This document shows, one piece after another, positions 3,001 through 38,170 of a stretch of 64,000 nucleotides of DNA (position 1 is its first letter; each line of letters opens with the position of its first letter). The notes beneath the pieces were generated by a model that made no database searches, was not told where the DNA came from, and worked only from the letters and a program-made list of their open reading frames with translations. The stretch is taken from NCBI GenBank assembly GCA_977030845.1, contig OZ365110.1, positions 30,814,001 to 30,878,000 of the forward strand. The letters are read 5' to 3'. A program made the translations under genes and the position numbers. Source of the stretch: Fimbriosthenelais zetlandica (lineage: Eukaryota).

Positions 3001-3019
3001 GAATAAAATGTCAAAAGCT

Positions 3020-4668
3020 TCAGTTCATAAATTATACATTATCTTTTATTCAACAAGGCCTTCATGTACATCCATATATTTGAGATTCTTCTTTGTCACA
3101 ACCAAAGGCTACATAATATATATTATTTCTATTTTACATATTTACAGAAAAGTAAATAACATATTTTGAAAGTAATAACGCTAACAGAGTCAATCCATCA
3201 AGAACTGCCAAACCATGAATATAATATTATTAAGATTTAAAGATATTCGTCTTTGTTCAATGATTGTTAATACAACACTCTTTTCTAAATCAGACTTTTA
3301 CTCCTTTCTGGCACACATATGGTAAATAAAATATATATACTAACAATGTCGTTTCATTCTCCATTATTCAATGTTAAATACATTCCACTTTTCCCATTAA
3401 TATAAGCCTTGCTAATAGTCTATCTTCTTTGATAAATAAATATATAATTGGATATTTACATTTTTACACACAATATGATAGGCCATTTTAGGAGTTGACA
3501 TTATATATAGATGAAAGCTCAGCAAAGGTAATGTTTTGTCATTTCATTCTGAAACAAAGCATTGGCAGTTGAACACACAATAAAGTATATGATCACTATG
3601 ACAAGTCTTGGTATTTTAATCGATGTAGCTTTTTAGAATGCTTTGTACGATGTTTCCATTGACGATAATGGACTACGAAGGGGGCATGTTATCCTATGGG
3701 TACGTAATTTGGGCTACAGGCAATACAAAAATTGAAAAACAACAATGGGAGCCAGCATCCGATTTCTCTTACAAAGCTCATGCAAGCTGAATAATAAACA
3801 AAAGAATTCCACCTGGAATATATATATAAGTGAATGAAACTTGGATAAAGGAAATGGAATTTTAAATCAAGTTATTGGAATTATAGTTCCACTTTCATTA
3901 AATTTGTATTTCCTGACTCTATCGATGTTTGCCCATGCTTTTCCCTTCTTGTCCTTTATAGAGAGAGGATATGGGAGATAATGTGTACGTTTGTCATGTT
4001 TGCATAAACAAAAGGTAAGTTTAGCTAGAAAGGGAAAATGTGCAAATGATGTTTTAATAAATATGTTTTATCTGTAGACATTTTGTGTAAACATGTGAAA
4101 CGAGGCATCTTATATGCGATAACTTCAAGTCGTTGGATTTTGCATGGAAATGTTTACCAACACTGAAATTAAAGCAATGGCAGCTGCTTCTATTTTAGTT
4201 TTCCTTTATAACAGGAACCATTAAAACATATCTTCTGAGAGACCATACATTAGGTATAACCGTTTGAGCTTATCCAGGGTCGATATAGTGTAATCTCTTA
4301 GAGACATTTCATAACGAAGTATTCACTACGTCATGTATTTATTTGGGTATCACATAGTAACTTTTGTTTATAGAACAACCACGCGAAATCTTCTATACAT
4401 CAGTGGTTATATGTGTACACATAGCAAAGTAGGCCCGGGATGGGCATAGCCACAGTCTTACACTTTAGTTAAAGCTCTCTCCTCCTTCTTGTAGCTTTTA
4501 AAGCTTGATCCATTTACGTAGAAGATATTCAGCAAAAACCTCTCTCTAGAAAATGTAGCCAATTACGGAGGCTTTTTGTGGATAGAAAAAGTTTAAATTT
4601 TAGAAGTCCTTCCCTTGAGACATTGTCCTTTTGGCGTTCAAAAGAGAAAGGTTATTTTGTTCAGCATA
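3020..4668 (-). other. Probable 3' UTR (~1.6 kb) with poly(A) signal at 3050-3045
   Basis: AT-rich sequence follows the stop. Minus-strand AATAAA occurs at 3050-3045 with a U-rich stretch downstream (2940-3000); another AATAAA is at 4343-4338. The end point is inferred, with no transcript data. Confidence 0.5.
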
Positions 4669-4996
4669 TCACGTAAACTGGGGACTTTCATAGTGATGTG
4701 ATGACCTTAGGGTACCGTTGCCACTGACAACACAACGTTCAGCACGTCTGCGATCATACGTGCTTGAATGATTACAGTCTTTAACATCCATGGTGACGTC
4801 ACACGCTGGTATGTAGTTACCTCGCTGTATATCATTGGGATTCTCTGTGATGACGTGATGGTGTGGCGGAAGTGACGTCACTGCCCGGCCCCACGTACCA
4901 GCAGGTATTTGGTTGTTCTCACCGTCCAGTAACTTGGGGTGTTCACACTGAATGTCAGCCAGGTGAGGTGGAGTCCCTTGCTCATGTGGGCTTTTC
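4669..4996 (-). CDS. Coding exon 7: cytoplasmic tail to stop
   Basis: Acceptor ctatttttatcattccag|, phase 2, matching exon 6 (AG|G = Arg). Open for 109 codons: KSPHEQGTPPHLADIQCEHPKLLDGENNQIPAGTWGRAVTSLPPHHHVITENPNDIQRGNYIPACDVTMDVKDCNHSSTYDRRRAERCVVSGNGTLRSSHHYESPQFT*. Confidence 0.9.
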
Positions 4997-7900
4997 CTGG
5001 AATGATAAAAATAGAATCGATTGGTTAGTAAAAGTTAAGAGGAAAAGTAAATAATCTATAACAACCTGGAAATGAATGAAGAGACGGAGTATAGGAGTTT
5101 TTTCGCTCGATTTCCAAGCTGGCGGTCAGTGAAAAGTCACTTTCAGTTTCACTAACTCAGGCAAATGTGTGGGCAAATTTACGAGTTCTTCTTTTAGAAA
5201 GGCATTAATATCACGCGGACAGTCTGCCTAACTCTTGTACGACTGTGCACAAAGGTAATTACCACTGCGCACGCGCATAACTCACAAAGGGGGGCTTTGA
5301 GCAGTGGCCATGGTACATGAGCAGCACTGAGGTCTTCTTTATCGCCCGGTTTCCGGTGCTGAGCCGATTGGCGAGCGTTTGGAGGAAGTCTCGTGTCGGC
5401 GAGATGAATCGAGACCCGCCATGAGTTGGTGGTCATCACCTGACACTGGACTTCCCCCCACGGTCGCTAGGGGACTCTGACCTTTGAGTTGCTTCAAGAG
5501 CGAATGCAGCAAGGCCAGGCTTAGTTTTACCGCAACTATCAAACACCCTAGAGGCCCTAGAGTATACATGTACTCTATATAATTATTATGCAGAAGGCGA
5601 TGATATGGGGGATGGGGATATGATTAAAAGGACGGAGAAAGGACAGATTGGTAGAGTTCGCTCAGATGTTTCATCCAGCCGAGCAGCAAGAATGTTTGAA
5701 AGATATATTTTCCCATAGAAGAAATTAGGTGAGATAGGTGAAGACAGTAATAATAAGGATGTACACAAATGACACATGACATGGATGACGACAGTGATTG
5801 GGTTGTGTCGTCCAGAGGGTAACGCCACCATCGCCGCATGTACGTACTACAATCCTCCGCCCTCACCCACCAAACCAAATGCCAACAAATCCTCCCAACC
5901 ACCATTTTTCTATCGTAATGTGGTTTTTCAGAATCGGACACGGGTGTTAATGTATCTGCCACGGGGAAAGGATCGTTCTTCTCCCTGAATGCTCATTAGC
6001 TCTCTTGGGAAAGGTCAAGGGTCACACAAAGGGAAATATATGAGCGTTCAAAGATGGCTCTATATCGCCGGCTCTTCCCAGCTGATTGCTTCCGGACAAG
6101 TCTTGGCGATGGTAATGTGTTCGCCAACAGGCACAACATATTGGTCGTTGGGTTTCAATTATCAACGAAGCCTTGGACACCGATACTTAGGCATTCCCAT
6201 AATTGAGGATGTGTGGGAGACACATATTTATAGATGGCTTTCCCAAATATATTGTAAGTAGGGCAATGTGGGCAAAAAACGCATCGCAGTAATTTACTCT
6301 TCTATATGGCATCTCTCAGCTAGGCATTCCTTCATAAAACACAAAAGACGTGCACCATTAACCAATGGGGAGATTCTGTGCGTATTTTACAATAATAATC
6401 TACTAAAGACGCATGTGATGAAATCTACATTACTGCACTTGAGAATTATGAGCATTTTGCTCAGATCTCCATAAAAAAGGGAAATTTAAATCTCCGTATC
6501 TCAATGCCAGGCTCCTATATGCTCGCATATCCCTGTGCATAAAAATTTGCAATGAACAAAGAGCATTCAGCAGCACCAAACATCAGACTTTGAGCCTCGT
6601 CAAATGTTCTTCAAATCTTCTCTTTGCACACAGAAAACCTCCATAAAAGACATAACAGCGTTCTCCATTGTAAGGGATATCAGTCTCCCAGTTTTTATGT
6701 ATGACAAATGTTTTATATTCACTATAGTTTGTATAAGGATCAAAGGGATGCATTCAAACTTACCTTTTAAGGTAGAAAATGGCGAGTGATAACAGCAGAC
6801 CCCCGAGGAAGACACCCAATGCCACCCCTATCGCTACGAGTATGAGAATGCCTGTAGTGAGAGAGAAAAGAGAAGGTTAGAGATCAGGGTGACTTTCTGT
6901 ATACCAAGACAGGTATTAATATCATCTAACTTCACAGGTATTGACTGGTGTTTGGTGATGTAGATGGCGTCTAAAAGGTATGCAATACACAGCACTTTGT
7001 TCATATTGGCGAAGAAATCCTTTGTGCAACTCTCACGGGGAGTTAAATGCAAAACATAAGCCTTTCATTTCAGCAAATGCTGATTTTGGAACATTTTGAT
7101 GACTATCGATATTACAACAAAAATTGGATTTAATTCAAATAACAAGTTTTATATATATGTGAATTTCACAAAATAAAAATCATCCGACCTCTTTTCTTTA
7201 TATCCAAATGGAAGAATCATCTACTATGATAAGGAGATGAAGTTGGGATGATGTGAGTTTAAATCAGAGTAGCTTATAGAGTGGCATTTAGAAACAACAG
7301 AACCTTTAAAAGCAGGAAGACACGAGATAAGATAATCCCAACGCCATCTTTGATTCCAATGATAAAAGGCTATGCGTGATAGCCTTCCCAGGCAGTGTTA
7401 TAAAGGACTCAGAAGAGGAGAGAGGGTTCCCTCAGTGCAGAGAGAAGCCTCAATGTTTGAACCATACTAATGCTTTCATTGTACAACTACCGCATGCTAA
7501 GCTTGAAACACAGCCTGTACTTACCATCCACCCTTCCCCTATAATGCTAGCACCAAATGGACCAATTTTCCCCTCCCGGAACTGTTTTCCCTTTAGCTTA
7601 CATGGCATGGGCAATTAGAGGCTTGCTTTTGGCTGGACCGACTGGCACTTGCCTAGGGCCATCATTTTTGGGCAAATTTAGACATGACCCTTCCTCCTAC
7701 ACGAGGTCATTATGGATTCAGATGCGAAAATATCGTGAGGTGAAGTTACATTTAAGACTGTCATCACGTGAGAGGAATGGCCTCAGAATGGCAACTATTG
7801 GTTTGAGACATCTCAGCAAGATACGGGCCGATGATGGAAATATATTTCCTTCTTATTGCAATCATTAGCAATAAAAGATGTTTCAGAAATATTAATGGGC

Positions 7901-10900
7901 AGTTGGGCCGTGTCGCTCCTGTGCGCTATTGACCTTTCAGAAGATCCGGAGCGACGGCTTGACTTGACCTAAGTGAATCTTATCTGGCCAAAAATTGACC
8001 ATCCATCATCTGATATCTGGCTATTGTCCTGCCTGCTGATGGTATTATTCCCCTTCTAAAAGATGCCAGCTCTGATGAATTCCCTAGCCTCCATGTCCCT
8101 GCCAATGCTGCCTTCACCCTGACCGACACCCCGCCTATTCATTACCTTCCATTTGCCATCGCGCCGATGGAGAAATTCATAAAGATCATTGCCTGATCAT
8201 TGGATTCTCCCCTGATGGCTTTAGAGACCTCTGTGACTCCTGACCGTTTGAACTCGGGGTGACCCATTTCCAAAGACAGTCCTCAACATAGCTGGATATG
8301 ATTCATGACCTTTGGCCAAGACAAGAAGCCACTGACCAGCAGTACCCACGCAGGTATTATTTTCCACTTGGCAGAAGGATAGAGAAGGGGAGAAAAGACA
8401 GATGTGAGTGAAGCCAAATAAGTTGAGAAGCACCAATTGGCAGTCATGGTTGTCCATTGAGCCTGCCAGCTTCATTTAGATCCATCCTAAATGTCTCACA
8501 TATCATGTCATCACCCTCCATGTTCATCCTGACAGGATGAGCTCTCACTGCCAGCCCATCAGGAAAATGTTTGAAAAGGCCCACTTTGATCTTGTCATGC
8601 ATAATTGAGGGATGGAAGTATAGCAGATCAGCTGAAATATGCCCGGTGATATATTTGAAAGATGGCTTCGGTGGAAGCTGCCAAGGGACAATGAGAGTTC
8701 ATTGCCCAAGAGGAGGCTCATTCCGGGCCGCGGCTTAGGCTGACGGATGGCCAGCCGGATCTTTACCTTTCACCAAGCTGCTATTTACAACTGCTCTTTT
8801 CCTACTGGTAGCACAATGAGAAAAACTTACAGTTTACACTGCACATTTATTTTTCCATTAACTTTTCTCTTTCCCGTCCTTCATTCTATTTACGGGCGGG
8901 GCTTAAATAGTATCAAAGAATTAGGGTCCACCACAGGGACATCCTAAATTAATGAATGATTAGCGAAATGGCCAAGTTTCAAGTACGAAGGCCTGGAAAA
9001 TTTAATATGCCTTAATTAAATATAAAGATTATCAACTTTCAGTCGCAGGTAAGAAATTTAAGCTAAAATTAAGAAAAAACTGCACTGAAAAACTGAGAAT
9101 CCCTCATTTCACGAATTATTTAGCGTCTTTTCTTGCCAACAAAAAAATAAAGATGGATTTTTCAATTGTGCTGGTTGCTTTTAAGTCCAGTCAACATGGC
9201 ATGCCGTCTGCCATTTTCTCCATTATGTCTATATCCATTGAGAGCAAAATGAGACAGGGGATGGCTGACTTTTTTTACTCCTCCATGTCTTATTAATGAG
9301 AAGGGCACACACGGTTCTGGTCAATTTCGACCTGATTAAACCAACGATCATGGTGAGAACGCCTGCCTTTGAAGCTGTCTGCCAATGGTCAGGTTAATTG
9401 CAACATTCTGTGCACACGTCGGTGCATAAGTCGGCGCTTTTGTCATTGTTGGATGGGAGGCGTTTTAATGCTTTGCCAGACGATTTCTGTAGGCTGCACT
9501 GCATGCCTTGTCGGACCAATATGCGTGGCCGTCCGTCGGTAGGGTCACGTTAGCGCGTGCGCCGCACGACAAAGCTGCATGTCCGCCTTGATCCACGCAT
9601 GTGCGCACACCACAAAGGCCGTGCCAGTGTCCGTGAGGGGTCAGGTCGGGTCAGGGCACATGCTCCGCTTTGGATGGACAGTTATTAGGCAGCATTATGA
9701 CTCATACTCGCACTTGTATTATGACACATGCCCCCTTCTAACAAATCCTGGCATACTTTTTCCACCATAAGCTCCTGGGTGCATCATGGATGCACTGCCT
9801 GGCTCCGGCGCCCCCGCTTCCTAATGGCCTTCTGTTTTTAATCCATCAAGTGACCACACAAAGAAGTGTCTGCAGCGCTCATTATGGCCGTCCATAGGGT
9901 GCAGGGTCAGACTCCTCCCTTTATGAGCATTATTAAGGCGCACTGTCATAAGTTCAAGGCATAGGGGCATGTTTAGTGTTGGAATGGTCAGACAGGTCAA
10001 TGGTGGGTCATATAGAACAGTGCTAAATCCTCCCCCATGGACCACTTCCTATGATCCCCCTCTAATGGCTGGCTTTTTTAGATTGCTTTTCTAGATTGGC
10101 ATAGTTTTCGATGTTGCTATAATAATACACCCCCAAGTGAAGGCAAGGAAAGCTCTGCAACTCACCATATGGGAACTGATTATCTGCTGTGGCCAGTATA
10201 GGGAAACTCCACTGCTGAGCTGAAATAAAAATAACGAAAATGAAAATTGACATGTTTTATTAACCTCAAGTAGGCGCAAGCAAGAACCTGAATGAGGGCA
10301 TCATGGAAGCATTATAATTTCCCTTTCATCTGCTTCACACTTTCCATTTCTTTCAAGGCCCATTTTTTTCCAAAAAGGAATTTATTTCTTCAGCGGTCAA
10401 TACAAATAAACCAAACCCTGGCAGCCATTCACAAATCTTATAGGGTAAAATACAGAGGATTTGCGTGAGGCTTTCTCTGGGAGTGGTCCATAAGCTTCAC
10501 CGCTCTTTGCCCAGACGTCTTAAAGCGTGTGTCTTCAAACAGACCCCATAATGGAATCACGAAATGCAACTTATCCAAGGCTCATATGGAGATGTCAACT
10601 TGAATATTCTACAGACCATCGTGTGTATTGGACCAAGGAGAAGGTAGAGATAAGAGAGGCTGGGTTATAAGGGGTGATATAGGTAGTAGTATAAGGAACT
10701 GGACGTTTGTGTGTGGTTCACGGCGCGGAAGAGCCATAAAATCCACTCATGTTTACGGCCTGAATTCGTCTGGGGAAGGTACAAAAGAACTTATACCAGA
10801 GCGAAAATTCGAATTTATTCGAAGGAATTTTGGAGGAGTTTGTAATGGATTTTCCTCAGAAGGACAACTCACTGCATACGCTACTTTTCAGAGCATTTAA

Positions 10901-13900
10901 GTTTTTATTAAAGAAACTATGGTCTAAAAATAGATTATAAATAGACTCTACATGCTGTGAAAACATTATTAACACTAGAGTACATAAATTCGCTCTAAAA
11001 TCCAATATGAACTTACATGTTTGTTTGTCCTTAGAACAGTTGCCCACTTCGCCGACCCACGAGTTACCTCGGCAGACTAGGCTCCATGTTTCTTCTGTCA
11101 TATTACATTTAACAATCAGATTCTCTCCCTGCCGGCGTACCCACACGTTCTTAGGTAAGTGTGGCTCCGGGCATCCCTGAGCTGTTGAATAAGAAAAACA
11201 TGTAAATACAATTAGAATCACAATAACTACCAGTGCTCCCCATGGTGCTTTACATCACAATGGAACATCAGAGAAATTATCTCAGATTTCATTCTGAATG
11301 CTGTAAGATGTTTCAGTAATATTACTAGTATCACTGTATATCATCATTAGAATACAATACAACTACTATTACTAATACAATTTGTAGTACTTATTGTACC
11401 CAGTATGAAAATGCTGACAATGTGTGTGCGTGCCCGCTTGATTCCTGGCATAACTCACATTTTCAGCTGCTCACACATGGTCATGAAACATGACAACCAT
11501 GTACATGTATATTATTATATGATTTGTCACGAACATGAAATGATTTAGTGATTTTTCAATCTCAATTTGCTGCAAGGACCCGGCATGCATGCAAAGTAAC
11601 ATGTTACATACTGCAATGGCAATAGGTAATCGGTAAAGTGTAGAAAATTAACTATAAGGAAAATTGATGCTGATTGGTCAGGCGATTTATAAACGATGAC
11701 AAATCGGACTGTGAGTTAGTTTGGTGTATTCTATAGCCTCCATCTATCAGCCGGGTATACCCCAGTGAGGGTCGTGCCTGTTGCACCCTCACCCATCCAA
11801 TATCGACCCCCTGGGGAAATTTTCTTTCTACCCCCGTGATTATTGCATAGACAGCACATCTATATTTGATAAGAGGTTTTTGGAACTATTACCACACAAC
11901 CTTTACCCCCTTTATTCTCAATATCCACTACTGGTTAGATAAAAAATTGAAATACACCCTGCCCCCGTGTCTTACTCTCCACTGTCTATGAAATTGAATA
12001 TGAATTCTCGTTCAACAGAAAATTGCAAAGCCACGTTTTGAACTATCATTCTCATCTATTGACTAGAACTTATGTTATGTCCTTTATTTTATTATTTCTC
12101 TTTTTAATATTTTCTGAGAATTTTCTCAATGTAATACACAGTATGTAGATACCATTATCACCGTCAAGAATTCTTTACGATGCATCTCTAACGATCAGCT
12201 AATGTGGGCAACATTGCTTTTTGAAGGAAAGGGAATGCATTTATTGGACCAATTAGTATAGACCCTCGTATGAGTCAATAGAGATGCACCGCCACTCCTC
12301 TGCTGGGCTTTTCATGAGGGAGGGCTGGCCATTTTTCTACTACATACTTTTTACCAAGGCTACTAAAAGCACCTATTAATATATTTCTCATTTGTTAGAG
12401 GTGTAGATAGTGTGGCTCGTTTACAAGCCAGCGCTGATGCTATCTTCAAAGCCATTAGGTAGTCTTGCCCGTGATCTATGGGTCTACTTGTGCCACCCTT
12501 GACCAAGCTTGTTTCTAAACTCTTCTTTCATAAGAACTACCCCCATCTGACCTCCAGAGCTATCTCAAGGTCAATACACCCTCCCCCACTCTCTTTTTAA
12601 TCCCTTATAGTCTATACCTTAAATAGAGACCAACATCTGCTGATTGATTCTCTATGACGAAGCTTTTACCCCTTATCCATTGGTTTATACCAAAACGTCA
12701 GTGTATTGTGAAACACATTCCTCAGATGTGAGGTATAGAAACAGAGATATACAACAGAGTTGCCTGTAAAGGGTAGGAGAAGACCTAGGTGACTATACTT
12801 GCCATACAAAAGGCAATGGCTTGTGGTGATAACTTACTGGAAGGGAGCATTCATGGAAGCCTCCCCTTCTCCCTTTCTGTTCCAGTATCGATGTGGTAAG
12901 AGGATCAAAGGCCTCATGTGTCAGATGTGTGTCAGCTATGGTCTTCTTTATCGCGTACCCGTAAAACATCTTAGACATAAAAAAACAAGCTTTTTGGGGC
13001 TCCCCTTCACATTCTCTCTTTCTATGACTTCTGATATAAAATGATTGCTCGCATCAATCATACATTCACAATGCTACACGACGATGTAGAACTTTTATAC
13101 AATATGGAATTTTGACTGATTTTCCACCATCTTTCCACTTTCAACCACCTTTTTAACTTGTGCCAAGTCCTCGACTATTCATACAGAATAAGAGCATTAG
13201 ACGAAATGCGATCCCTTTATGAATTTTTGTTGGTATGCAGAAACTGGGGAGGCATATTACAGGATTTGAATGGACCACACTAAAGCTCTGGTAAAGTCTT
13301 GCATCTTGAACAAAATCATAATCAATACCATACAGTGTACACATGGATGTGCTTGTCCTGAGAGACATACATAATATAAGTCCTCCCATGAACATATCCC
13401 TTCTATCCACAGAGTATTCAGCAAAAGATGTTCTTGCAGAATAACATACTTTGCTTGTTTTCTGGGCCAGTCTGTCGACCATAATAATATGGGCTAGGGG
13501 GATCAATAGCTTCTATCTCTCTATCAGTCCACCAAAGCTTTGCCTTTTAGGATCCCTCCGTTTCAATGACTAGTTCCATTCATCCATTCAGTATTGATTT
13601 GCTATAGGGATCCACTGAATATTTCACAATAAATCAGGTAACATTACATCACAATTACATATATAGAGATCAGGAGGATTCACCGCCAGTTCTTCAATAT
13701 GATTCAACCAGGCTTTTGGATGTCAATCGCTACCCCCAAACTGTCTGAGATGCAGCCAAGCGTCAGTTCTGTAGGGTTATCCACTGTTCACTCGCCTATT
13801 GAAGACTCAGGGATCAGAGACCCGAGTCTGTGATGTTGGATAAAGGACGTGCTAGTAATGGGGCCTTGCCTCAGGCATGGCTTCATCCATAGAGATTTCA

Positions 13901-19900: not shown

Positions 19901-22900
19901 TAATTGACCATTGTCTCTGTCTTTTTACGGGTCCTTGGCTAATCGATCTTCTTCCACGCAATTATTTGACCAGTACAAACTTTGTTATGACTGTGAATAC
20001 ATTTATAGCAATGCGTGCCTTCCATGCATGGTTGCAATCTCTTCCTCCTGATCGGTGCTACGAAAAGAGAGATATTCTAACGCCTTCTCAGACATTCCCA
20101 AGTTTCCACCACACTTTTATCTGTCTGCAGTTCCGAATGGCAGGATACATGTGCTCATAATCATGACCTACTGTTTTCATATGATATTATTCCATCTTTT
20201 GTCATGCCTTCTCTACTATATAGGTAGTCTAGTTCTTACAGAGGAGGTGGAGCGAAATGGAGAGAAGTATATGGGTGAGGAGTAGGAGGGCCACGAGGAG
20301 GAGGAGAAGACGGTACACTCACGCCATAGTCCTCTACATCAATCTACGTTCTTTCTCCATAATTACCTCGCCCCCTGACACCCCTCCTCCTCTCACTGCT
20401 CCACATTTTCACTGTCTTACAACCATCGATTTTTTTTCAGCTCTTCGTCCTCCCTATTCTACAGCCCCTTCACTGGGTCTTCTTGTTTTAAGACTAAGCT
20501 TTCAATTGAGGAGGTTTTAAAACAGAAAAGCACTCAAACTGTCCTTTCATGCCATGGTGTACAGAAGGCCCGCCATTGTACCAGGGACTTTGTTTATGGT
20601 CATCAATGTAGACTCAATGTGAAGAAAAGACGACATTTAGCTCATTGCAAAGTAACACAAAAACATTTAATAAAGAATGGACATGAACCTTTTTAAAACT
20701 TTAGCAAAACTTGAGGAAGTATCAAAGGAGGGATAAAGAATGAAAGAGAAGGAAAAACTCTTACCTTGATAATGTAATACGAAGGTGCCGGGTGATAACA
20801 CGGCTATATCGACCATGCTGGAAGCTGAATTATAAACTAAACTCTCCCTCTGGTCGCCTGTACATGTGGTCAATGTCCTTTCTTGATCATTCTCTGTGAT
20901 AGTGGCTAGTTCATAACATACATTAGATCTACTCCCGGGTACTATACTCCCTCCTGGTACTTTCTCTACGGGAGGATCATCTTTTGCGATCACAGAACCG
21001 AATTTGAAGAGTTTAACGATGACCTTTTGACCTCTGCGGACGCGGACCCGCCAGGGGCACGTAGAGGTGCCCACTTGCGATGATTGGTCTAGTTGGGATG
21101 AGATGAAACCTGATTGGTCAGTTAGCAGAATCTCATGGGATCCACGGCACTCCCCTTCATCTCCCTGTGCAACTGGAAAAATGAATATTGCGAAGTATGA
21201 ATATAAATCTAAAGGCAGAAATTACACTAAAATGAACATTTATACATGTACATTTCTAGAATACCATTTTATAGTTGAATAGCAGCCTACAAAACAATGG
21301 ATCCGGACTATGGCTTATAAGGTTTTAAAGGCTAAGTTTGTTGGCAACCTTTATTAAATATTGGACTGTCTCTTGGACAAAAAAAAGACTGTCTGGGCTG
21401 AGAAGGGAGCATGCATTTTTAAAGATGTCGGACCCGCCGATAATTTGGCATGGGAGACGCTGCCTCTTCATATCACCATGGCAACGCCTGTATAAATATT
21501 TACACCCGGAAGTCACCAATTGACATTTTCCCATGATGCTTACACCAACCGGAATTTTTTAAATTCATATTATGAAATTGTATTTACAGGAATTCATAAA
21601 AACGTGACAAGGAATCGATAATTTTATGTAAATGTCTTCATGTAGGTAGGCCTATTTTAGTGTATTATATTGGCTAACAGTTGATAGCAAATATCATATG
21701 TCACCGTAAAATTACTGTCACACTGTCAGCAATATCACAGTGACCACGCGACGCATGCATAAAGCACGATGCGCATGCTCACTAACCTCATTGACTCGCC
21801 ACATTTTCACATAACTCACCCTTCCCATAATTCACCAACCAATATGGCTGACTGCATCTTTAATCAAGTCCAGAAATGACATTTTTATCAGGTCCGGCGG
21901 ATCTGCTAAACCCCTCTGTACGCCTCATGGGCTGGGGCTACCCATTTACAGCAGGAGTGGATTGATCGAATTGAGTTGTGCAGGGGTGGGTGTTGGGGCG
22001 GTAAGGACCCTCACTTCATGAACATTTCATCTTCACAACTCATTTTCATATCCTTCTCCAATGAACTTACTGCATGGCACAATTCTGCATCAATTGTAAT
22101 AATTCTACATTGAACAGTGCCCAAAACATTTTTTATATAGTCCCATATATTTTACTTTGCAGATGTAAATAATGTTGCAATCATATTACAACCGTGCTTC
22201 ACAATGGATGAAAATACTGTTGAATCCACATCTTGCCCTCCCAAAGCCTTCTTCCATTTCAAACTTCCATTTTTTCAACAAAACATTTCCCTTTTCCCTT
22301 TTATCTGATTGTCAGGGCCGTCCATTTTCCTGTCCTAAATTTTCGGAATGTTCTGATGTTTCAAAACGCTGAAAAACAACTGTTAACAGCTTCACTTTTC
22401 AACAAGCATTTTAACGCTGTCCCTCAGAATGATGCGCCTCATACCCTTCTTCATATTCCTAGATGTAACCCATTGATGACTCAGGTATTCGACGAAGGGA
22501 AGGCATTGACGGGGGTGGGGGGTGGTAAGCCGAATGGAGGGGAAGGATCTATCAACTTTGTGAAGCCAGTTGAAATTGAGTGGCGATTGGATGTGTGCAA
22601 CTGCAGACGGTCACTCGGTCAAACACTCGTCTTTTATCAATGATAAACCCCTAGCCATGTGGAATGTCATTTCCCTAAACTAATAACCTGGTGGGAGAGA
22701 GGGACGGAGGGGTGAGGCAGGCCTGATGAATGAAGACTGTCCAGTTTAGGACATTATCTGGCGGCTAGGGCTCCGTCCGTGTCATAACAACATCCTAATT
22801 GAATGAGAGGTATTAGGAGCCGCAGCCTTGGCCTGCATACTAAAGAGCAGCTCAAAGTATAGGGAAATGCACACCGAGAGCAAGTCAAACTCATCTATAG

Positions 22901-25900
22901 GCAAAGGCTGGCCTGACCCTGCGAACTAACAGTGATAAAGCACTAAACGCTAAATACCAGTATTATTGGAATGTCTATTCCACTAGGAGTTTCATTAAAG
23001 GGCCTAGCTCTAGTCCGTGTAGAGGGGTAGGTTGTCAAAGCTTTGGCTAGGGCCACCAAGCACTGTAGGCATTTCACTTGTGAGTGGCAGGGGCACAGGG
23101 GGAAAAACAATCTGCAGGGGCTTTTTCAGACTCAGACTTGTTGAGAAAAAAGGTGATTGCCAGTCGAGACCTGCATTTGAAGGTGTTTTCAAATAAAGCA
23201 AATGTCGGTGTAGGGAAAAAGACACTCTCAAGCCATGGGTGTAACTATAACGTACGGAGAGGGAGAGGCAAGGGTTGCTTATACATTCAATTGCTTCACA
23301 AATCTTATACTGTATTTATGATATTAAACCGATTCTCTGAAAAATAAACAGATTGGTTAAATCTGTCTATGATTAAGTTTTGTTTTGAAATGGTTCCCAG
23401 GTCACACACAATCTTAGTGGTATGTGCCGATAAAATTACGATAAAAGATTTGTTACAATAAACACTTCATTGATTTTATTGGCCTACATAGCATATGAGG
23501 AGAAGACAGTAGGTGGGAGAAGTTCATCTCGATGCCATAACTGACAATAGCTTTCCTGCCATCAATTTGTGCTCATGATTTCTTCACAGAAGCCGCCAAC
23601 AATGCCCGCAGTAGGCTTATGTTGGTTACCCTCCATAGAGGAGCACAAAGCAATTCACTCAACCTTCCACACTCACAGACCGAGCATTCATTCTACTAAG
23701 ATTGCTTCTGGTATTGGATGATTAAGCATAGAAATAGAAAAAAAGAAGAATAAGAAGGTATGAGCAATGCGGGTAAAAACGATTTCTGGCTTGTGAATTG
23801 CAATGCTTTTGTTCCCAGGAGCTAGAGTGTCAATGGGGTTTTTTTCTCTAATATTCCGAGTGCGGCAACTTCTACATAATGCATTTCCATTTATTTTATA
23901 TTATATACATTTGTTACAGATTGTGTGTCCATTTATATGGGAATTATTAAGTTACTGTATTTTGAGTTGTCAGAGGCTTGAGAGCATCTCATATTTCAGA
24001 GCGAAAGAGTATACATTTTTCAGTTGGATTTTCCAGCACAGAATATATGTGGCTGGGATGAGTATCAAATGCGTGGATCGTATATAGGAGCCTCTCAGGT
24101 CCATTTTCCATATTGATGTCAGTGGAAATAAGATGAATGTACATCATTTCTATTCACATTTATCACATGGCTAGATATTTCTTCCCACCACACCATCCCA
24201 CCAATATCCGCATGGTTTATCACCATTTTGATAAGAGCTATGGGTGTAGCTTTTGTGGCACGCACAAGGCGTTTGTGTATGTGGGGAGAGGAACGAGTGG
24301 GACCTTCAATAGAAAATCCTGGAGGCGCTTTGAAATGTGATGGGAAAGTAGTATAGGAAATGAGGCCCCTTTCAAGGCCTCCGAGGAGTCGAGACCACAA
24401 GCCCTGAGGTAATTCTACCACTGAGGCGAGGGTTGAAACGAAACGTTTAGATGGCACATGTCCTTTACAGGTAACTCGGGGATGAAAGGGTCCATACCTT
24501 CACCGACCTTCCTCTCTTCTCCATCCCTCGCGTACAGAAGATCCCCTTCTAAGCCTTTGTAGAAGGGGCGAGTAAAAGAAAGTTGAATGGAGATAACAAG
24601 ATAATTTGGTAGACTCTTTAGTCTGAATAACTTAATTCAAGGCTTGATTTTAAGTATAGTTTAACTCCAGAATAGACAAATTTGATTGCAATAAATGCTT
24701 TATATCATCAGTCAAATTTGTATAAAGATTACCTACATGTATAGCGTATATAAATATATCGTTTACCCCTGGAAAGGTGAAGTATTATTAGAAATGTACA
24801 TATAAGTAGGTAGCAATCAAGGTTGCATTGGATAAAAACTCCATATGGCTTGTGACTTTGATTGCATAAAATATGCTCGGGCTTGACTGACTGGTTAAAA
24901 TAAGGTTGGCGATAGGTTAACTCCACCTCAGTGTGAGGTGCATTGGAGCACGAAGCCTTGTTGAGGCAACAGCATAGTGTGGGCGCTCAAGCGTGACTTT
25001 GGAAAAGCCTGAGTTGAGAAATCTCTACAGTGTCTCAAAGCCTTGGTTTGTAACTTTTCCCAGATACCACAGAACTGGTCACTGACTGTCCAACACCAAA
25101 GCATGAAGAATTGCATGTAATATTTAGAGAGACAAAATATAGACAAAATAGATATACAATATAGATTGCATGCATAACTGTCCAATAACCACCATGCATG
25201 TTTTCTTTGAGAAGGGTAAAACAAGGAGGTTTTACCAGTCCAAAAGCGAATTAATAATCATCTTTCTTTCAATTCCATTCGTCTCCAAGCATTTCGTTCA
25301 CATGACATCTTTTGTATAATCCCACAATAGGCAAAAATACCCACCTTTGATGCACTCATACGCCGCCGATAAGTAAGAAGAAAAGTCCCTATGGCAAGGT
25401 TTGGTGTCGTGCAATTCCGGTTCGGCGATATAAACTCTACATTTTGGCCTCCCGCTACATTTACCGTCCATGTAAGGTAAAACGTCAGTAGAACAGCCGA
25501 GGAAACCGTGATTGGCTGTCACACAACGTCCGGCTGACATACGTCCATATTTGGCACTTCTCATTAAGATCACGTGACCAGGGGGGCAGCTGGCGTTGAA
25601 GTATTCAGATGGGCAGTAGTCGCGAACAGCTGAAAAGAGAACAATTATGATTGGTTGTTAAGACAACAACTGCAATTGGTGGGGAAATATGGGGAAAAAC
25701 TGTCAAAGTTAAGGCCTTTGAGTGATATTAAATTTTGAGCTACAGGCCCAGAGTTATGAAACTTCCCCCAGCAAAAAGTCTTTTTGGTAATGGAACTGAG
25801 GGGACTTCATGTCCTGCAGGATTTCTTTGCCCAGGTTCCTTCAATAAAATACAAATCAACAAAGAAAATGTCCCCATTATTTAAACAGCAACATCAATTA

Positions 25901-31762: not shown

Positions 31763-31825
<63 letters not shown>

Positions 31826-34800
31826 TTAGCGGACACAGCTGCCAAGGCTTCCATCTCTGACTCCCACATGTATTCCCTTTGTTCTGCTCCTGGTACGGCA
31901 AAAAGGGGAGAAAACCGGGAGAGGGGAGAAACTGAGGGGAATGCGAGAACAGAGAGGATAAGAAGAGTGTTTGGGCCAAAATGAGGATATTGAAAAATAA
32001 TACATTTGTATTATAAGTGAAGAAAAAGCAGAGAGGAAAGCAACGGACAAGAGGTGGAAGGGGGCATCTGCATATCGACATGCACTGACTTGTTCTGGGA
32101 TCTGTTTCAAAACATTAAACCGGCCCCAGATGATCCAACTGACGCATGGTCAAAAACAGAAATATGTACAAGAGAAACAAGAAAGTGAGACAAGAAGAAA
32201 AGAAGACCTGTGATAAAGAAACACCATAGTTCTCTTCTGACAGAAAATGTGTGAGCATCGATTTCTAGTGTAAATATTATGTTACATGATCACGCGCAGA
32301 GGAGAAGCAGTAGGAAGAGGAAGTGGTTATTTTATATGAGTGATAAACTCCCAACATCTTTGTCCTCTTGATATCCTCTCTCAACAACAATGAATGCTGG
32401 GGAAACGTGAGGCGCTCATGTACGAGCAACACACGGGCAAAATACAACGTGTATAGACTTGCCCTATATGAACAAAAAATGTGTATTATATTAATAAACA
32501 TGAGTCCTATATTGTAAGATCAGCTTATTGAGGTATATAGATCTACATTTAAATCCAAATATATTTGCGCCACAGTATAAATTTCACTGAAGACTGCATG
32601 GGAAAATGTTAAAGGACTAAGGCAAGTCCTATGACCAGTTGCAGACATGGGGAAAAATGCCACATTTGTTGTGCTCCCCTTTTTCAAGGATACCCATGGG
32701 GAATGAAGGCCGCTAAAGAAGGTAAAGGGGGATGGGGGATGGGGGAGGGGAGAAGGGTGAAGGTGGAGGAGGGCCCGAGGGGGTCGGCCTGTCTAAGATG
32801 GGGCCAGTTTTCGGGGCAGTCACGTGCGTTCTGACTCGAGATAAATTAATGTCAAAGTCAGATGTGACTCAAGGGGAGGAGATTGCATTATATCCTTTCT
32901 CTTTCTTTAGTGGTAATGAAAATACCTCGGATCATACTCAAATATTCAGATCCCGGAACAGTTCATTTACCAATTTCATTCTATTTTGGGGTCATTTTTA
33001 CCTTTATGCCATGGTACTTAGATCACATGATAATTTGCATGCAACATACCCAAAGAGAATCTGGGTAAATCAGGGCGTCTCTTGGGCGTCTCAGGGGTCG
33101 GGCCGTGGGTGGCAGGGGTGGTGAGGATGTCTGGAATTTTCCCACGTGATTCAACATTCAGCAGGACTGGTACTGCCCCAAGCGACGGGTGGGGGCACTG
33201 AGCAAATAGTTGATCATCACCCGCAAGGCAAAAAAAAATCACGCAAAAAGTGGTTTCTTCTCACTTCTTTTTACAAGACCACACGCAGACATGTTTTTCC
33301 CCATTGCCAATTAAGGCCATTTTATGATGTAATATTGTGGTTATCTGAATTGTACCTGCAGCAATTTTCAGGGGCAGGGTGGTGGGGTTGGTTAGAGCCA
33401 TATATTTCGTCTTTAAATGTCGGTTAGGCCGCTTTGTATTTTTCATTTCATGATTCAATATGGTCAAATAGAGGTCCACCTATGTGATGATTATTTTTCT
33501 GTATTGTATGTAACAGATATAGACTAATCGTGTTATCATTTCCTATCAGTGAATCGCTGCATGGGTATTATCTAGAATTTAAATGTCTATACGGCCCACT
33601 GTTAAGAGAGCGGGCTGCAGCAGAATGTTAGATTTTGACGATGTAAATTGGTTGTTTTCGCAGTCCGAGGTGAAGTGGGAGAAGAAAGGAAGAAGGAAGC
33701 CAGTGCCCCCGTCACCCCGCGATCCTGTCACCCCTGTCATGATTGGGAAGCCATGTTGTAGAGGCAAGAGTAAGAGAGGCTTGTCAGCTGGCTTTCACGC
33801 GGACCATTAGACTGGCTCCCCTACCTTATAACTTAGTGCACTGTTGGTTTGTTTCATGGCATTTCAATCCCCCTGAAAGGATCAGTATTTATCTAATACA
33901 TCTCTCTTGTAAGCTAGTAGATAGTATAGTAGGCCTAATCGACATTCACGAGTGACATATTCGACTGAGATATAGGGCAGCGAATAGCCAAGTTAACATA
34001 ATTTTTATGAACGTGCTGTTCGAGAATATATGGCTAGGACCCAACCCGAACAGACAAGTATACTTCATTCTAATTCAAGCATGCTTATAGTTTACAAGAA
34101 ATTCTATAAATTCTACCGCATTTATAGCCAAAACTAGGCAATTTCACATAAAGAAAGTCAAAAAGCCCACTCCAAGTCGGAATCCGGCAGTCATTCTTCA
34201 TTATCTCTATTTGTGAATAAATATGCGGGGAAATAACTAAAATGGAATAGACTTTGGAAAGACTAAAACAGATAAGTGGAACGAGGGAGATTTTTGAGGG
34301 CGCATGCTGGCCTTTCCCTTAGCCACTGCTGGGAAAGCGGATGTGGCGTTGATAGGAACGCGTGCGCATGCGTGATAGTCACGTGATAAGGGTTAGATGG
34401 TCATTAGTTGGTGGGGGAGGGCGTGATGAAGTTAGCACGGTACATGGGTCTGATTTCCTTAACTCAGATCCCGGGGGAGGGATCGTATGTAGGTGGAGTA
34501 TAGAGTCTGGAATGAACAGGATGAAAAGAAATATACGATTCCTGCTGAAAATGTTTTGCAAAGAGATGATATCAACAGTGTATTACATAAAGGGGTATCT
34601 ATATAGCTTATAATAGGCCTATATAGACCTTATGGCCGAAAGAAAAGAGTAGGGCAAAGAGGGGAAAATTGCCCTTGGTCAGTGTGCCAGAAACTCAATT
34701 ATGCGAGAAACTGCCAGTTTCGGCCATTTGAAATATTCTTCTTTGTAGTTGGGAACATTTACTTGGAATGTTGATTGTATCGTTAACTATTAATCCTGAT

Positions 34801-37800: not shown

Positions 37801-38170
37801 GCCTACATAATGAAATGCTTTGCAAAAGTTGGTTTTAAAGACTAGAAGGTATTAAAACCATCTGTTACTTGATCTCTAGCTGACGGGTCGCTAACCATTG
37901 ACGAGATGCAGAAAAAAAGATGTTAAATATTAGCTTAATGATAAAACAATAATGGATATGGAGGACATTTAGGGGGCATGTGTCACGCGAGTAATGGCAT
38001 CTATGACACTCAATCCACACCCACTGGAATAGTTTGTAATGTCTTAAGTTTAATTTTTACTCACCTAAAGGCCCTGCTACTTGGTTCCCTTCAGCACGGC
38101 GAGTCAAGTAAATGATCCCCAATGAAATTATGACAAAAATCAACCTTGAGTCTGATATTTGGTACTCCAT
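4669..38170 (-). CDS. Spliced gene (7 coding exons, 477 aa): type I membrane protein with SUEL-lectin-like, CUB-like and Sushi-like domains, TM helix and Tyr-motif tail
   Basis: join(38170-38065,25629-25345,21172-20765,11181-11017,10219-10166,6851-6764,4996-4669) = 106+285+408+165+54+88+328 = 1434 nt, open to TGA at 4671-4669. All six introns are GT..AG with matching phases (1,1,1,1,1,2); intron sizes 12435, 4172, 9583, 797, 3314 and 1767 nt. The junction peptides join domains seamlessly (GPL-A-VRDYC, ECIK-V-AQGD, LHYQ-A-QGCP, FPY-G-ILIL, YLK-R-KSP). Confidence 0.9.
6764..6851 (-). CDS. Coding exon 6: transmembrane helix
   Basis: Acceptor ccttctcttttctctctcactacag| and donor AAAG|GTAAGT; 88 nt, phase 1-2. 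Encodes GILILVAIGVALGVFLGGLLLSLAIFYLK, followed by basic KRK on the cytosolic side. Not in the ORF track. Confidence 0.93.
10166..10219 (-). CDS. Coding exon 5: 18-codon juxtamembrane stalk
   Basis: Strong acceptor ttttcgttatttttatttcag| and donor TATG|GTGAGT; 54 nt, phase 1-1. Encodes (S)QQWSFPILATADNQFPY(G), joining directly to the TM exon as FPYGILIL. Confidence 0.87.
11017..11181 (-). CDS. Coding exon 4: compact Sushi/CCP-like module
   Basis: Acceptor ttcttattcaacag| and donor ACAT|GTAAGT; 165 nt, phase 1-1. QGCPEPHLPKNVWVRRQGENLIVKCNMTEETWSLVCRGNSWVGEVGNCSKDKQT has 4 Cys, CPxP..P and C...W...C, plus two N-glycosylation sequons (NMT, NCS). Confidence 0.9.
20765..21172 (-). CDS. Coding exon 3: CUB-like domain
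   Basis: Acceptor cattttttccag-type tract and donor CAAG|GTAAGA; 408 nt, phase 1-1. C..LLTDQSGFISS...CPWRVRVRRGQKVIVKLFKF...CYELATI...C...YNSASSMVDI...FVLHY follows the CUB pattern (SG.I.S, C.W.I...G..I.L.F, S.SN.L.V, F...Y). Confidence 0.92.
25345..25629 (-). CDS. Coding exon 2: SUEL/rhamnose-binding-lectin-like (Gal_Lectin-type) domain
   Basis: Acceptor ttctcttttcag| and donor AAAG|GTGGGT; 285 nt, phase 1-1. Encodes (A)VRDYCPSEYFNASCPPGHVILMRSAKYGRMSAGRCVTANHGFLGCSTDVLPYMDGKCSGRPKCRVYIAEPELHDTKPCHRDFSSYLSAAYECIK, with 8 Cys in SUEL spacing and AKYGR (cf. ANYGR), CSGR..C and YL...Y.C motifs. Confidence 0.95.
31767..31825. repeat. Interrupted (GA)n microsatellite
   Basis: (GA)13-GGGAGAAA-(GA)12G, read directly; lies in intron 1. 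Confidence 0.97.
38065..38170 (-). CDS. Coding exon 1: signal peptide
   Basis: ACCATGG Kozak context; MEYQISDSRLIFVIISLGIIYLTRRAEG/NQVAGPL has a hydrophobic core and an A-x-G cleavage-type site. It ends TTAG|GTGAGT, a phase-1 donor matching exon 2. Not in the ORF track because it is too short. Confidence 0.85.

What the first reader, a model, noticed from the sequence alone, without database searches (positions are those of the whole stretch)
4669..38170. Orphan receptor with SUEL-lectin / CUB / Sushi ectodomain and a tyrosine-motif tail
Seen: a complete 477-aa type I membrane protein built from phase-matched exons. Known: SUEL domains occur in latrophilins, EVA-1 (Slit/Netrin co-receptor) and rhamnose-binding lectins; CUB plus Sushi occur together in SEZ6, CSMD and LEV-9/LEV-10-type synaptic or complement-like proteins. 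I know of no characterised protein with one SUEL, one CUB, one Sushi, a TM and a non-catalytic tail. Inference: it belongs to a lineage-expanded, functionally undescribed annelid/lophotrochozoan receptor family (recalled from Capitella-type hypothetical proteins) that could act in neural wiring, adhesion or non-self recognition.
Basis: partly seen in the sequence, partly recalled or inferred. Interest (0 to 1): 0.75.

Follow-up and report, generated by a model that had tools for sequence, protein, structure and literature searches.

The report
Annelid SUEL–CUB–Sushi orphan receptor gene
This is a real, intact seven-exon gene for a single-pass membrane receptor of an uncharacterised, annelid-only family with about 60 copies in this genome; every member examined carries a cytoplasmic tyrosine motif (YESP) that is a known docking site for signalling proteins in vertebrates.

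Summary
A minus-strand gene of seven GT-AG, phase-matched exons (38170..4669) encodes exactly 477 aa. Its parts, in order, are a signal peptide, SUEL, CUB, Sushi, an 18-aa stalk, a TM helix and a 108-aa tail.

- **Domain calls.** SUEL passes Pfam. CUB and Sushi fail Pfam, but predicted folds support both (CUB Z 9.2; all 50 top Sushi rows are CCP modules).
- **Orthologue.** No RNA run was listed. An orthologue in a second species keeps all seven exons and splice sites. Synonymous sites are saturated (pS 0.84) while pN is 0.14, and the TM helix is 30/30 identical.
- **Family.** The genome holds about 60 collinear SUEL-CUB-Sushi loci in tandem clusters. Named relatives are only annelid "hypothetical proteins" (Capitella, Lamellibrachia, Ridgeia). 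No paper describing the family was found.
- **New features.** The canonical rhamnose/galactose contact residues of SUEL are mostly replaced. A TM GxxxGxxxG zipper and a tail motif H-x-Y-E-S-P-x-F are conserved across the family. YESP is the published Vav-SH2 consensus.

The most likely mechanism is a non-catalytic phosphotyrosine-signalling receptor; this is inferred, not shown. The scan's first readers noted the same architecture at two other loci of this genome.

The parts
38065..38170 (-). Exon 1: ATG and signal-peptide-like hydrophobic N-terminus (aa 1-35; phase-1 donor GTGAGT)
   Evidence: hydrophobic window at residues 5-23. The orthologue has the same ATG context, the same 106-nt exon length and the same donor.
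25345..25629 (-). Exon 2: SUEL / rhamnose-binding-lectin-type domain (aa 36-130) with 8 Cys. The YGR motif is kept and the DPC motif is degenerate.
   Evidence: Pfam PF02140 at 40.9 bits, above the 31.4 cut-off. PDB hits are 5H4S and latrophilin lectin domains. It is 81% identical in the orthologue.
20765..21172 (-). Exon 3: divergent CUB domain (aa 131-266) with a roughly 25-residue low-confidence variable loop
   Evidence: AF2 model pLDDT 88.7. Foldseek top hits are all CUB. VIA Z 9.2-8.0 to spermadhesin, MASP and TSG-6 CUBs. The profile against PDB gives cubilin, PCPE-1 and TSG-6. Pfam CUB reaches only 14 bits.
11017..11181 (-). Exon 4: short Sushi/CCP-like module (aa 267-321) with 4 invariant Cys, an invariant Trp and a conserved CN-x-T sequon
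   Evidence: Alignment A2. AF2 pLDDT 84.7. All 50 top VIA rows are CCP modules, with Z 4.5-5.3. There is no Pfam or PDB sequence hit. It is 89% identical in the orthologue.
10166..10219 (-). Exon 5: 54-nt stalk mini-exon (aa 322-339) ending in F-P-Y plus a split Gly codon
   Evidence: Found as a conserved island by blastn against the orthologue. It is 17/18 identical. The FP[FY]G|GT signature lies upstream of the TM exon in many paralogues and is invariant in homologues.
6764..6851 (-). Exon 6: transmembrane helix with a GxxxGxxxGG glycine zipper and a basic stop-transfer KR
   Evidence: It is 30/30 identical in the orthologue despite pS 0.66. The zipper is present in 12 of 20 paralogue regions on the forward strand and 0 on the reverse strand. 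G341, G345 and G349 are invariant in alignment A3.
4669..4996 (-). Exon 7: 108-aa cytoplasmic tail and stop codon, with three Tyr (430, 449, 471). No catalytic or Pfam domain.
   Evidence: It is 84% identical in species 2 and 95% identical in species 3, with the same C-terminus. No paralogue similarity was found.
4675..4698 (-). C-terminal motif H-H-Y-E-S-P-Q-F (family consensus H-[IV]-Y-E-S-P-x-F), a candidate phosphotyrosine docking site
   Evidence: The motif occurs in 8 of 20 paralogue downstream regions and 0 on reverse strands. Y, E, P and F are invariant in Capitella and siboglinid homologues. YESP is the published Vav SH2 consensus (PMC2196311).

Best explanation
**Shown.** This is an intact, selectively maintained seven-exon gene. 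It encodes a 477-aa type I membrane glycoprotein of an annelid-restricted multigene family. The parts in order are a signal peptide, one SUEL domain, one divergent CUB, one short Sushi/CCP, an 18-aa stalk, a TM helix and a non-catalytic tail.

**Inferred mechanism.** It acts as a non-catalytic signalling receptor.

1. The ectodomain binds an extracellular ligand. The CUB domain, with its variable loop, is the most diversified part and the likely specificity determinant. The SUEL site has lost most canonical rhamnose/galactose contacts, so the ligand is probably a protein or a non-canonical glycan.
2. The invariant GxxxGxxxG transmembrane zipper mediates self-association or pairing with a partner in the membrane.
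3. On engagement, a cytoplasmic tyrosine kinase phosphorylates the conserved tail tyrosine in H-x-Y-E-S-P-x-F.
4. That site then docks an SH2 protein of the pY-x-x-P class (Vav-type Rac GEF, Nck or Crk) to drive Rac/actin responses such as adhesion, engulfment or guidance.
For: **Gene and model.** All sites are GT-AG, phases match and the product is 477 aa. The orthologue keeps all seven exons, with pS 0.84 against pN 0.14. A third species has a 95% identical tail.

**Domains.**

**Family.** Own-genome matches are 67 for SUEL, 43 for CUB and 61 for Sushi. They are collinear and on the same strand at about 60 loci. Annelid homologues have the same order.

**Sugar site.** In the HMMER alignments to 5H4S and latrophilin, the window has Pro at the Glu position, Arg/Asp at the Gly position, Ser at the Lys position and Lys at the Asp of 'DPC'. 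Only the Tyr of YGR is kept. The contact residues are taken from PMC3269628.

**CUB is the most divergent domain.** It is 24-37% identical between paralogues, against 40-57% for SUEL and 32-57% for Sushi. In the orthologue it is 69% identical, against 81-89% for the other two.

**TM zipper and stalk.** Both are conserved.

**YESP motif.** It is found in 14 instances across the window, the orthologue, 8 paralogues and 4 homologues from other annelids, with 0 on control strands. [quoted passage not shown]
Against: - There are no expression, phosphorylation or binding data. No RNA run was listed.
- YESP specificity is known from vertebrate proteins. Whether annelid Vav, Nck or Crk SH2 domains share it is assumed.
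- The whole 108-aa tail is highly conserved among three species, so partners other than SH2 proteins may matter.
- The motif could serve sorting rather than signalling.
- TM and motif exons were recovered in only 12 and 8 of 20 paralogue regions. Fetching was limited to 10 kb per region, so absence in the others is untested.
- Loss of sugar binding is inferred from alignment only.
Confidence: 0.45

Rival explanations
1. It is an adhesion or auxiliary-subunit type protein, like SEZ6, NETO, LEV-10/SOL-1 or EVA-1. On this reading it works through its ectodomain and TM helix as a co-receptor or partner of another membrane protein (an ion channel or guidance receptor) in neurons. The tail motif would serve trafficking or scaffolding rather than phosphotyrosine signalling.
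For: - The nearest named families by protein-language-model features are SEZ6 and NETO2.
- NETO2 CUBs are among the structural matches.
- The TM helix is 30/30 identical across species with saturated synonymous sites, as expected for an intramembrane partner interface.
- The locus has 10-kb-scale introns with at least 13 collinear conserved non-coding islands rich in TAATTA / GGATTA-type cores. This pattern is typical of developmentally or neuronally regulated genes.
- Paralogues have 1:1 orthologues in other species.
Against: - The gene has one CUB, one Sushi and no LDLa, so it lacks the repeat architecture of SEZ6, CSMD, NETO and LEV-10.
- No sequence similarity to those families was found beyond the fold.
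- About 60 paralogues is unusual for channel auxiliaries.
- The invariant YESP motif fits a known SH2 consensus exactly.
Confidence: 0.27
2. It is a canonical lectin pattern-recognition receptor. On this reading the SUEL domain binds rhamnose or galactose on microbes, and the expanded tandem family provides innate-immune or non-self recognition diversity.
For: - The SUEL Pfam hit and the 8-Cys RBL pattern.
- RBL/SUEL lectins act in invertebrate immunity (PMC3269628, PMC8878817).
- About 60 loci lie in tandem clusters on C10, C1, C25 and C38.
- One domain is variable.
- A Vav-type motif would suit phagocytic signalling.
Against: - Four of the primary sugar-contact positions (Glu, Gly, Lys and the Asp of DPC) are substituted, in the window and consistently in the family.
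- This gene is a lone, strongly constrained 1:1 orthologue (pN 0.14).
- Several paralogue lineages pre-date the species splits. This is unlike fast birth-and-death immune families.
Confidence: 0.15
3. It is not a functional gene. The exons would be chance ORFs, a pseudogene, or pieces of different genes joined wrongly.
For: No transcript evidence could be obtained. Pfam does not recognise two of the three claimed domains.
Against: - Seven collinear exons have conserved splice sites, start and stop in a second species.
- Strong purifying selection is seen.
- The exon order is the same in annotated annelid proteins.
- The folds are confidently predicted.
Confidence: 0.02

Closest known systems
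Annelid 'hypothetical' SUEL-type lectin / CUB domain-containing proteins: Capitella teleta CAPTEDRAFT_228921, _225510 and _225957; Lamellibrachia satsuma LSAT2_006151; Ridgeia piscesae NP493_62g04007
   Same: They share the same collinear plan: signal peptide, SUEL, CUB, Sushi, an FP[FY]G stalk, a GxxxGxxxG TM helix and a tail with Y-E-[SR]-P-x-F.
   Different: They are only 27-37% identical in the CUB domain. Their tails are otherwise unrelated and usually longer, with a second YY/YH-E motif that the window gene lacks. None has been characterised.
SEZ6 / SEZ6L, CSMD, NETO1/2, LEV-10 and SOL-1 (CUB- or CUB+Sushi-containing neuronal type I proteins)
   Same: They are single-pass proteins with CUB (± Sushi) ectodomains and short non-catalytic tails. 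They are the nearest named clusters by language-model features. NETO2 and other CUBs match structurally.
   Different: Those proteins have repeated CUB/Sushi or LDLa modules and no SUEL domain. No sequence-level homology was found. The YESP tail and the glycine-zipper TM are not their hallmarks.
EVA-1 / EVA1C and latrophilins (ADGRL), membrane receptors with SUEL/RBL domains
   Same: They have an N-terminal SUEL domain with 8 Cys on a membrane receptor. Latrophilin lectin domains are the best solved matches after fish RBL.
   Different: EVA-1 has two SUEL domains and a FAM176 tail. Latrophilins have OLF, HormR and GAIN domains plus 7TM. The window protein has one SUEL, a CUB, a Sushi, one TM helix and no FAM176 or GPCR parts.
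Soluble rhamnose-binding lectins (CSL3, SUEL, SML)
   Same: The fold family, disulfide pattern and YGR motif are shared.
   Different: The DPC-x-GT-x-KYL motif and the Glu, Gly and Lys sugar contacts are replaced. The window protein is membrane-anchored and has a single CRD.
YESP phosphotyrosine sites of ZAP-70 (Y315) and Syk (Y348), which bind the Vav SH2 domain
   Same: The Y-E-S-P core is identical (PMC2196311).
   Different: The context is a receptor tail in an annelid. Neither phosphorylation nor binding has been shown.

Membership tests
SUEL / rhamnose-binding lectin domain (PF02140) | Pfam HMM score above the gathering cut-off | tested here: met
   40.9 bits against 31.4, covering model positions 2-80 of 80.
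SUEL / rhamnose-binding lectin domain (PF02140) | Eight conserved Cys and the YGR motif | tested here: met
   Cys at 41, 50, 71, 81, 93, 99, 114 and 128 align with RBL and latrophilin Cys. 'KYGR' is present. The feature is as defined in PMC3269628.
SUEL / rhamnose-binding lectin domain (PF02140) | DPC motif (-DPCxGTxKYL-) and the primary sugar contacts Glu, Tyr, Gly and Lys (CSL3 E7/Y27/G83/K86; LPHN1 E42/Y63/G117/K120) | tested here: not met
   By HMMER alignment only Tyr is retained. Glu becomes Pro, Gly becomes Arg/Asp, Lys becomes Ser and the Asp of DPC becomes Lys. The family consensus is QPC-x-KD-x-x-[AS]-YL.
SUEL / rhamnose-binding lectin domain (PF02140) | Actual rhamnose/galactose binding | not testable with these tools
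   This needs recombinant protein and a glycan array.
CUB domain (PF00431) | Pfam HMM score above the gathering cut-off | tested here: not met
   14.0 bits against 21.4. Homologues score 16.7-16.9 bits.
CUB domain (PF00431) | CUB beta-sandwich fold | tested here: met
   AF2 pLDDT 88.7 and pTM 0.80. The 35 best Foldseek rows are all CUB. VIA Z 9.2 (1sfp; rmsd 2.8 over 90 residues) and 8.7 (MASP-1 CUB2). The profile against PDB gives cubilin, PCPE-1, TSG-6 and ADGRG6 CUBs.
CUB domain (PF00431) | Four Cys in two disulfides, including the C-x-W strand | tested here: met
   Cys 139, 169 (C-P-W), 216 and 234. C38, C85 and C103 of the exon are invariant or nearly invariant across 73 sequences.
CUB domain (PF00431) | Ca2+-binding acidic triad of ligand-binding CUBs | not tested
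   No residue-level structural alignment was available. By eye, the sequence around F-x-F and C-Y-E does not match the canonical F-D-L-E / C-x-Y-D.
Sushi / CCP (PF00084) | Pfam HMM match | tested here: not met
   0 of 26 family members match at E<=1. A profile against PDB sequences finds no CCP chain.
Sushi / CCP (PF00084) | Four invariant Cys plus an invariant Trp between Cys3 and Cys4, with a Pro-rich start | tested here: met
   G2, C3, C25, C36, W41, G43 and C48 are invariant in 26 sequences. The module is short, at 46 residues from C1 to C4.
Sushi / CCP (PF00084) | CCP fold | tested here: met
   AF2 pLDDT 84.7. Foldseek's top rows are C6 and Crry, with probability 0.96-0.97 but E about 0.2. 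All 50 top VIA rows are CCP modules, with Z 4.5-5.3 and rmsd 2.1-3.6 over 48-54 of 54 residues.
SEZ6 / CSMD / NETO / LEV-10 type proteins | Repeated CUB-Sushi units or CUB+LDLa; sequence homology | tested here: not met
   The gene has a single CUB, a single Sushi and no LDLa. The resemblance is by features and fold only.
EVA-1 / EVA1C | Two SUEL domains and a FAM176 (PF14851) cytoplasmic domain | tested here: not met
   There is one SUEL, and the tail has no Pfam match at E<=1.
Annelid SUEL-CUB-Sushi receptor family (unnamed) | Collinear SUEL-CUB-Sushi exons, an FP[FY]G stalk, a GxxxGxxxG TM helix and a Y-E-[SR]-P-x-F tail motif | tested here: met
Vav/Nck/Crk-class SH2 docking site (pY-x-x-P; YESP) | Presence of the Y-E-S-P core in a cytoplasmic, conserved position | tested here: met
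   Residues 471-474. The core is conserved in 14 instances. The consensus is quoted in PMC2196311.
Vav/Nck/Crk-class SH2 docking site (pY-x-x-P; YESP) | Phosphorylation in vivo and SH2 binding | not testable with these tools
   This needs phosphoproteomics or peptide pull-downs.

The most novel reading that the evidence does not exclude
Annelids may have evolved their own large family (about 60 genes here) of non-catalytic phosphotyrosine receptors. In these, a degenerate lectin-CUB-CCP ectodomain with a hypervariable CUB loop would be wired, through a glycine-zipper TM helix and an invariant Vav-type YESP site, directly to Rac/actin control. That would be an independently invented, immunoreceptor-like recognition system, used as a cell-surface recognition code for neuronal or self/non-self discrimination in Lophotrochozoa.
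Probability: 0.2. Interest if true: 0.7.

Novelty: new variant of a known kind. Interest (0 to 1): 0.45.

Why it matters
Lophotrochozoan cell-surface signalling is poorly charted. This work defines a phylum-restricted receptor family that databases list only as hypothetical proteins, and it supplies an evidence-backed gene model.

Three testable molecular handles come out of it:

- an altered lectin site;
- an invariant transmembrane glycine zipper;
- an invariant YESP tyrosine.

If the YESP site does recruit Vav, Nck or Crk, the family would be a compact example of how new non-catalytic tyrosine-signalling receptors arise by shuffling old extracellular modules. It would also give annelid models (Capitella, Platynereis, tubeworms) candidate recognition receptors for neural wiring, symbiont handling or immunity.

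Tried and rejected
1. **First six-exon model (459 aa).** Rejected. In the orthologue the Sushi-to-TM junction would create TGA. A blastn island revealed the 54-nt stalk exon, which restores 477 aa.
2. **RNA evidence.** The look-up of sequencing runs listed no run.
3. **Logan contigs as possible transcripts.** The contigs carrying a 95%-identical tail (L036-L038) are genomic DNA of a third species, not transcripts.
4. **Sushi by sequence.** Pfam on 26 members and a profile against PDB sequences found nothing. Only the fold and the Cys/Trp pattern support it.
5. **Conserved intronic islands as extra exons or RNA genes.** Rejected. They show no 3-periodicity, have stops in the frames, and give no Rfam match.
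6. **Paralogue survey.** The frequencies (TM 12/20, motif 8/20) are therefore lower bounds within 10 kb.
7. **Taxonomic range.** The word-indexed homologue searches returned few full-length proteins. A rotifer SUEL cluster (score 0.86) is an unfollowed lead.
8. **Spurious long hits.** P0005, P0010 and P0027 from the CUB-exon search are bacterial or low-complexity and were discarded.
9. **Accession-number and keyword paper searches.** These found no description of the family.
10. **Complex prediction.** Not used, because no specific pair available here is claimed to bind.

Full report
**Observation.**

On the minus strand, stop-free stretches with obvious domain content lie at about 25.6 kb (SUEL-like), 21.2 kb (CUB-like), 11.2 kb (Sushi-like), 6.85 kb (a hydrophobic helix) and 5.0-4.67 kb (the tail). 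An ATG followed by a hydrophobic start sits at 38170.

Joining them at canonical GT-AG sites first gave a six-exon, 459-aa ORF. Comparison with an orthologous locus showed that this junction could not be right, because the orthologue would read TGA between the Sushi and TM exons. A blastn comparison then exposed a conserved 66-bp island containing a 54-nt exon (10219-10166) with good acceptor and donor sites in both species.

The final model has seven exons:

| Exon | Coordinates | Content |
|---|---|---|
| 1 | 38170-38065 | ATG, signal peptide |
| 2 | 25629-25345 | SUEL |
| 3 | 21172-20765 | CUB |
| 4 | 11181-11017 | Sushi |
| 5 | 10219-10166 | stalk |
| 6 | 6851-6764 | TM helix |
| 7 | 4996-4669 | tail and stop |

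Intron phases are 1,1,1,1,1,2.

Hydropathy finds only an N-terminal signal-like segment and one TM segment. The ectodomain has 16 Cys (8+4+4) and three N-glycosylation sequons.

**Is the gene real?**

No public RNA run could be listed, so I used comparative evidence.

- The CUB exon's best database hit (P0001, 69% identical) lies on a 4.2-Mb contig of another species. I walked that locus to 37 kb.
- All seven exons are there in the same order, with AG/GT at every boundary, the same ATG context and the same stop. The ORF is intact at 483 aa.
- Amino-acid identity is 370/477.
- Synonymous sites are saturated (pS 0.84) while pN is 0.144.
- Identity by segment: TM 30/30, stalk 17/18, Sushi 49/55, tail 91/108, SUEL 77/95, CUB 94/136, signal peptide 12/35.
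- A third species (Logan genomic contigs) has a 95% identical tail with the same C-terminus.

This is a functional gene under strong purifying selection.

**Domains.**

*SUEL.* It passes Pfam's cut-off (40.9 bits against 31.4). It matches solved RBL and latrophilin lectin domains, with all eight Cys aligned.

*CUB.* It fails Pfam (14 bits against 21.4). Three other lines support it:
- A 73-sequence family profile hits only CUB proteins in the PDB (cubilin, PCPE-1, TSG-6, ADGRG6).
- The AlphaFold model (pLDDT 88.7) matches CUB domains almost exclusively.
- VIA Z reaches 9.2.

Exon residues 60-84 form a low-confidence loop. It coincides with the indel and most variable stretch relative to the orthologue.

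*Sushi.* It gets no sequence support: 0 of 26 members hit Pfam, and the profile finds no CCP chain among PDB sequences. However, the family alignment has four invariant Cys, an invariant Trp and a conserved CN-x-T sequon. The model (pLDDT 84.7) aligns to CCP modules in all 50 top rows, with Z 4.5-5.3 and rmsd 2.1-3.6 Å over 48-54 of 54 residues. I accept it as a short, divergent CCP.

*Tail.* It has no Pfam match.

**Family.**

Six-frame searches of the window's own 447-Mb genome find 67 SUEL-exon matches (40-57% identity), 43 CUB-exon matches (24-37%) and 61 Sushi-exon matches (32-57%).

By coordinates these form about 60 loci, always in the order SUEL, CUB, Sushi on one strand. They lie in tandem clusters on C10, C1, C25 and C38. 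A few carry stops. The window gene (C10: 30.82-30.85 Mb) stands alone, with its nearest relative about 1.5 Mb away. Its tail exon has no paralogue match.

Elsewhere, HMMER over 1.84 billion representatives gives 381 hits. Most are single-exon ORF fragments. The annotated full-length relatives are all annelid 'hypothetical proteins': three from Capitella, one from Lamellibrachia and one from Ridgeia. The ESM Atlas cluster of 106 members is entirely Annelida.

A CUB-domain tree shows several own-genome paralogues pairing with sequences from other species across long inter-paralogue branches. One pairs with a Capitella protein. Much of the expansion is therefore old, not a recent species-specific burst (the tree is short and partly unresolved).

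Two first-reader notes of this scan describe the same architecture at other loci of this genome. One of them coincides with my SUEL/Sushi hits at C10: 24.30 Mb.

1. *The lectin site is altered.* RBL sugar contacts are Glu, Tyr, Gly and Lys, plus the Asp of the DPC motif (PMC3269628). In the alignments the window keeps only the Tyr of YGR. Its substitutions are Pro for Glu, Arg/Asp for Gly, Ser for Lys and Lys for Asp. The family shares a different conserved string, QPC-x-KD-x-x-[AS]-YL.
2. *The stalk exon.* It ends in FP[FY] plus a split Gly codon. This is a family signature.
3. *The TM helix.* It carries an invariant GxxxGxxxG zipper. G341, G345 and G349 are invariant in alignment A3. The zipper is found in 12 of 20 paralogue regions and on 0 reverse strands.
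4. *The tail motif.* In tails that are otherwise unalignable, H-[IV]-Y-E-S-P-x-F recurs in the window, the orthologue, 8 of 20 paralogue regions (0 on reverse strands), Capitella and, as Y-E-R-P-S-F, the siboglinids. YESP is described as the consensus Vav SH2-binding sequence in ZAP-70 Y315 and Syk Y348 (PMC2196311). From general knowledge, pY-x-x-P is also the preference of Crk, Nck and Abl SH2 domains.

**Mechanism.**

*Shown:* a glycosylated single-pass protein with three disulfide-rich modules outside the cell, a highly constrained TM helix, and a non-catalytic tail with a conserved tyrosine motif.

*Inferred:* ligand binding falls mainly to the most diversified module, the CUB domain and its loop. 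The SUEL domain has probably been re-purposed for a protein or an unusual glycan. The zipper drives self-association or partner association. The YESP tyrosine, once phosphorylated by a cytoplasmic kinase, docks a Vav/Nck/Crk-class SH2 protein, linking recognition to Rac/actin.

I give this about 0.45.

- The main rival (about 0.27) is a SEZ6/NETO/EVA-1-like co-receptor or auxiliary subunit acting without phosphotyrosine signalling. It is favoured by the perfect TM conservation, the nearest-neighbour families in feature space and the CNE-rich, long-intron locus.
- A canonical microbial-glycan pattern-recognition role (about 0.15) is weakened by the lost sugar contacts and the slow, orthologue-preserving evolution.
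- An artefact is very unlikely (0.02).

**Comparison and novelty.**

The protein is not a member of the SEZ6, CSMD, NETO, LEV-10, EVA-1 or latrophilin families. In each case defining features were tested and not met. It is a member of an unnamed, annelid-restricted family already present in databases as hypothetical proteins. No paper describing that family was found.

I rate it a new variant of a known kind: a non-catalytic modular receptor. It is of moderate interest. The gene model is solid, the family is large and phylum-specific, and the YESP and zipper features give concrete experiments. However, function is unknown, and lineage-specific orphan receptor families are common in invertebrates.

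Noticed in passing
window 35433-35396, 35066-34773, 27584-27493, 27208-27166, 22818-22719, 22650-22608, 18100-17910, 17705-17534, 16334-16196, 13887-13811, 9890-9809, 9705-9611, 5351-5248: Thirteen collinear conserved non-coding islands lie in the gene's introns. They are shared with the orthologous locus of a species whose synonymous sites are saturated. Identity is 70-98% (for example, 43 bp at 98% at 27208-27166). Substitutions show no codon periodicity, stops occur in the frames, and there is no Rfam match. The cores are rich in TAATTA, GGATTA and ATTGAACAAG-type strings, so they are probably enhancers.
   Followed up: partly
window 39000-64000 and 1-4600: No ORF of 110 aa or more with recognisable coding character was found, and there is no Rfam hit in the flanks. 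The gene appears to sit in a gene-poor stretch, isolated from the tandem clusters that hold its paralogues.
   Followed up: partly
window 31725-31830 (minus-strand ORFs reading LSLSLSLS...): A CT/GA-type dinucleotide-like simple repeat in intron 1 produces long spurious 'LSLS' ORFs.
   Followed up: no
L029 about 3170-3260 and L035 about 4780-4870 (paralogue tails); P0155, P0050, P0104: Many family members, but not the window gene, carry a second tyrosine motif ((P)-x-Y-[YH]-E-[LFA]) about 20-40 residues after YESPxF. A subfamiliy comprising the window gene, L018, L022 and L028, which share near-identical TM helices, ends right after the first motif.
   Followed up: partly
Atlas cluster, row 2: A rotifer cluster of 'SUEL-type lectin domain-containing proteins' (671 aa, 69 members) is the nearest non-annelid neighbour by language-model features (score 0.86). 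It may be a distant relative or convergent.
   Followed up: no
G000 C10: 8174202-8174360, C10: 5591443-5591598, C1: 50070534-50070698, C25: 3765739-3765915, C25: 19399470-19399649, C1: 38191426-38191557: Some paralogue SUEL or Sushi exon matches contain in-frame stops or are split. This suggests that a minority of pseudogenised family members lie within the tandem clusters.
   Followed up: no
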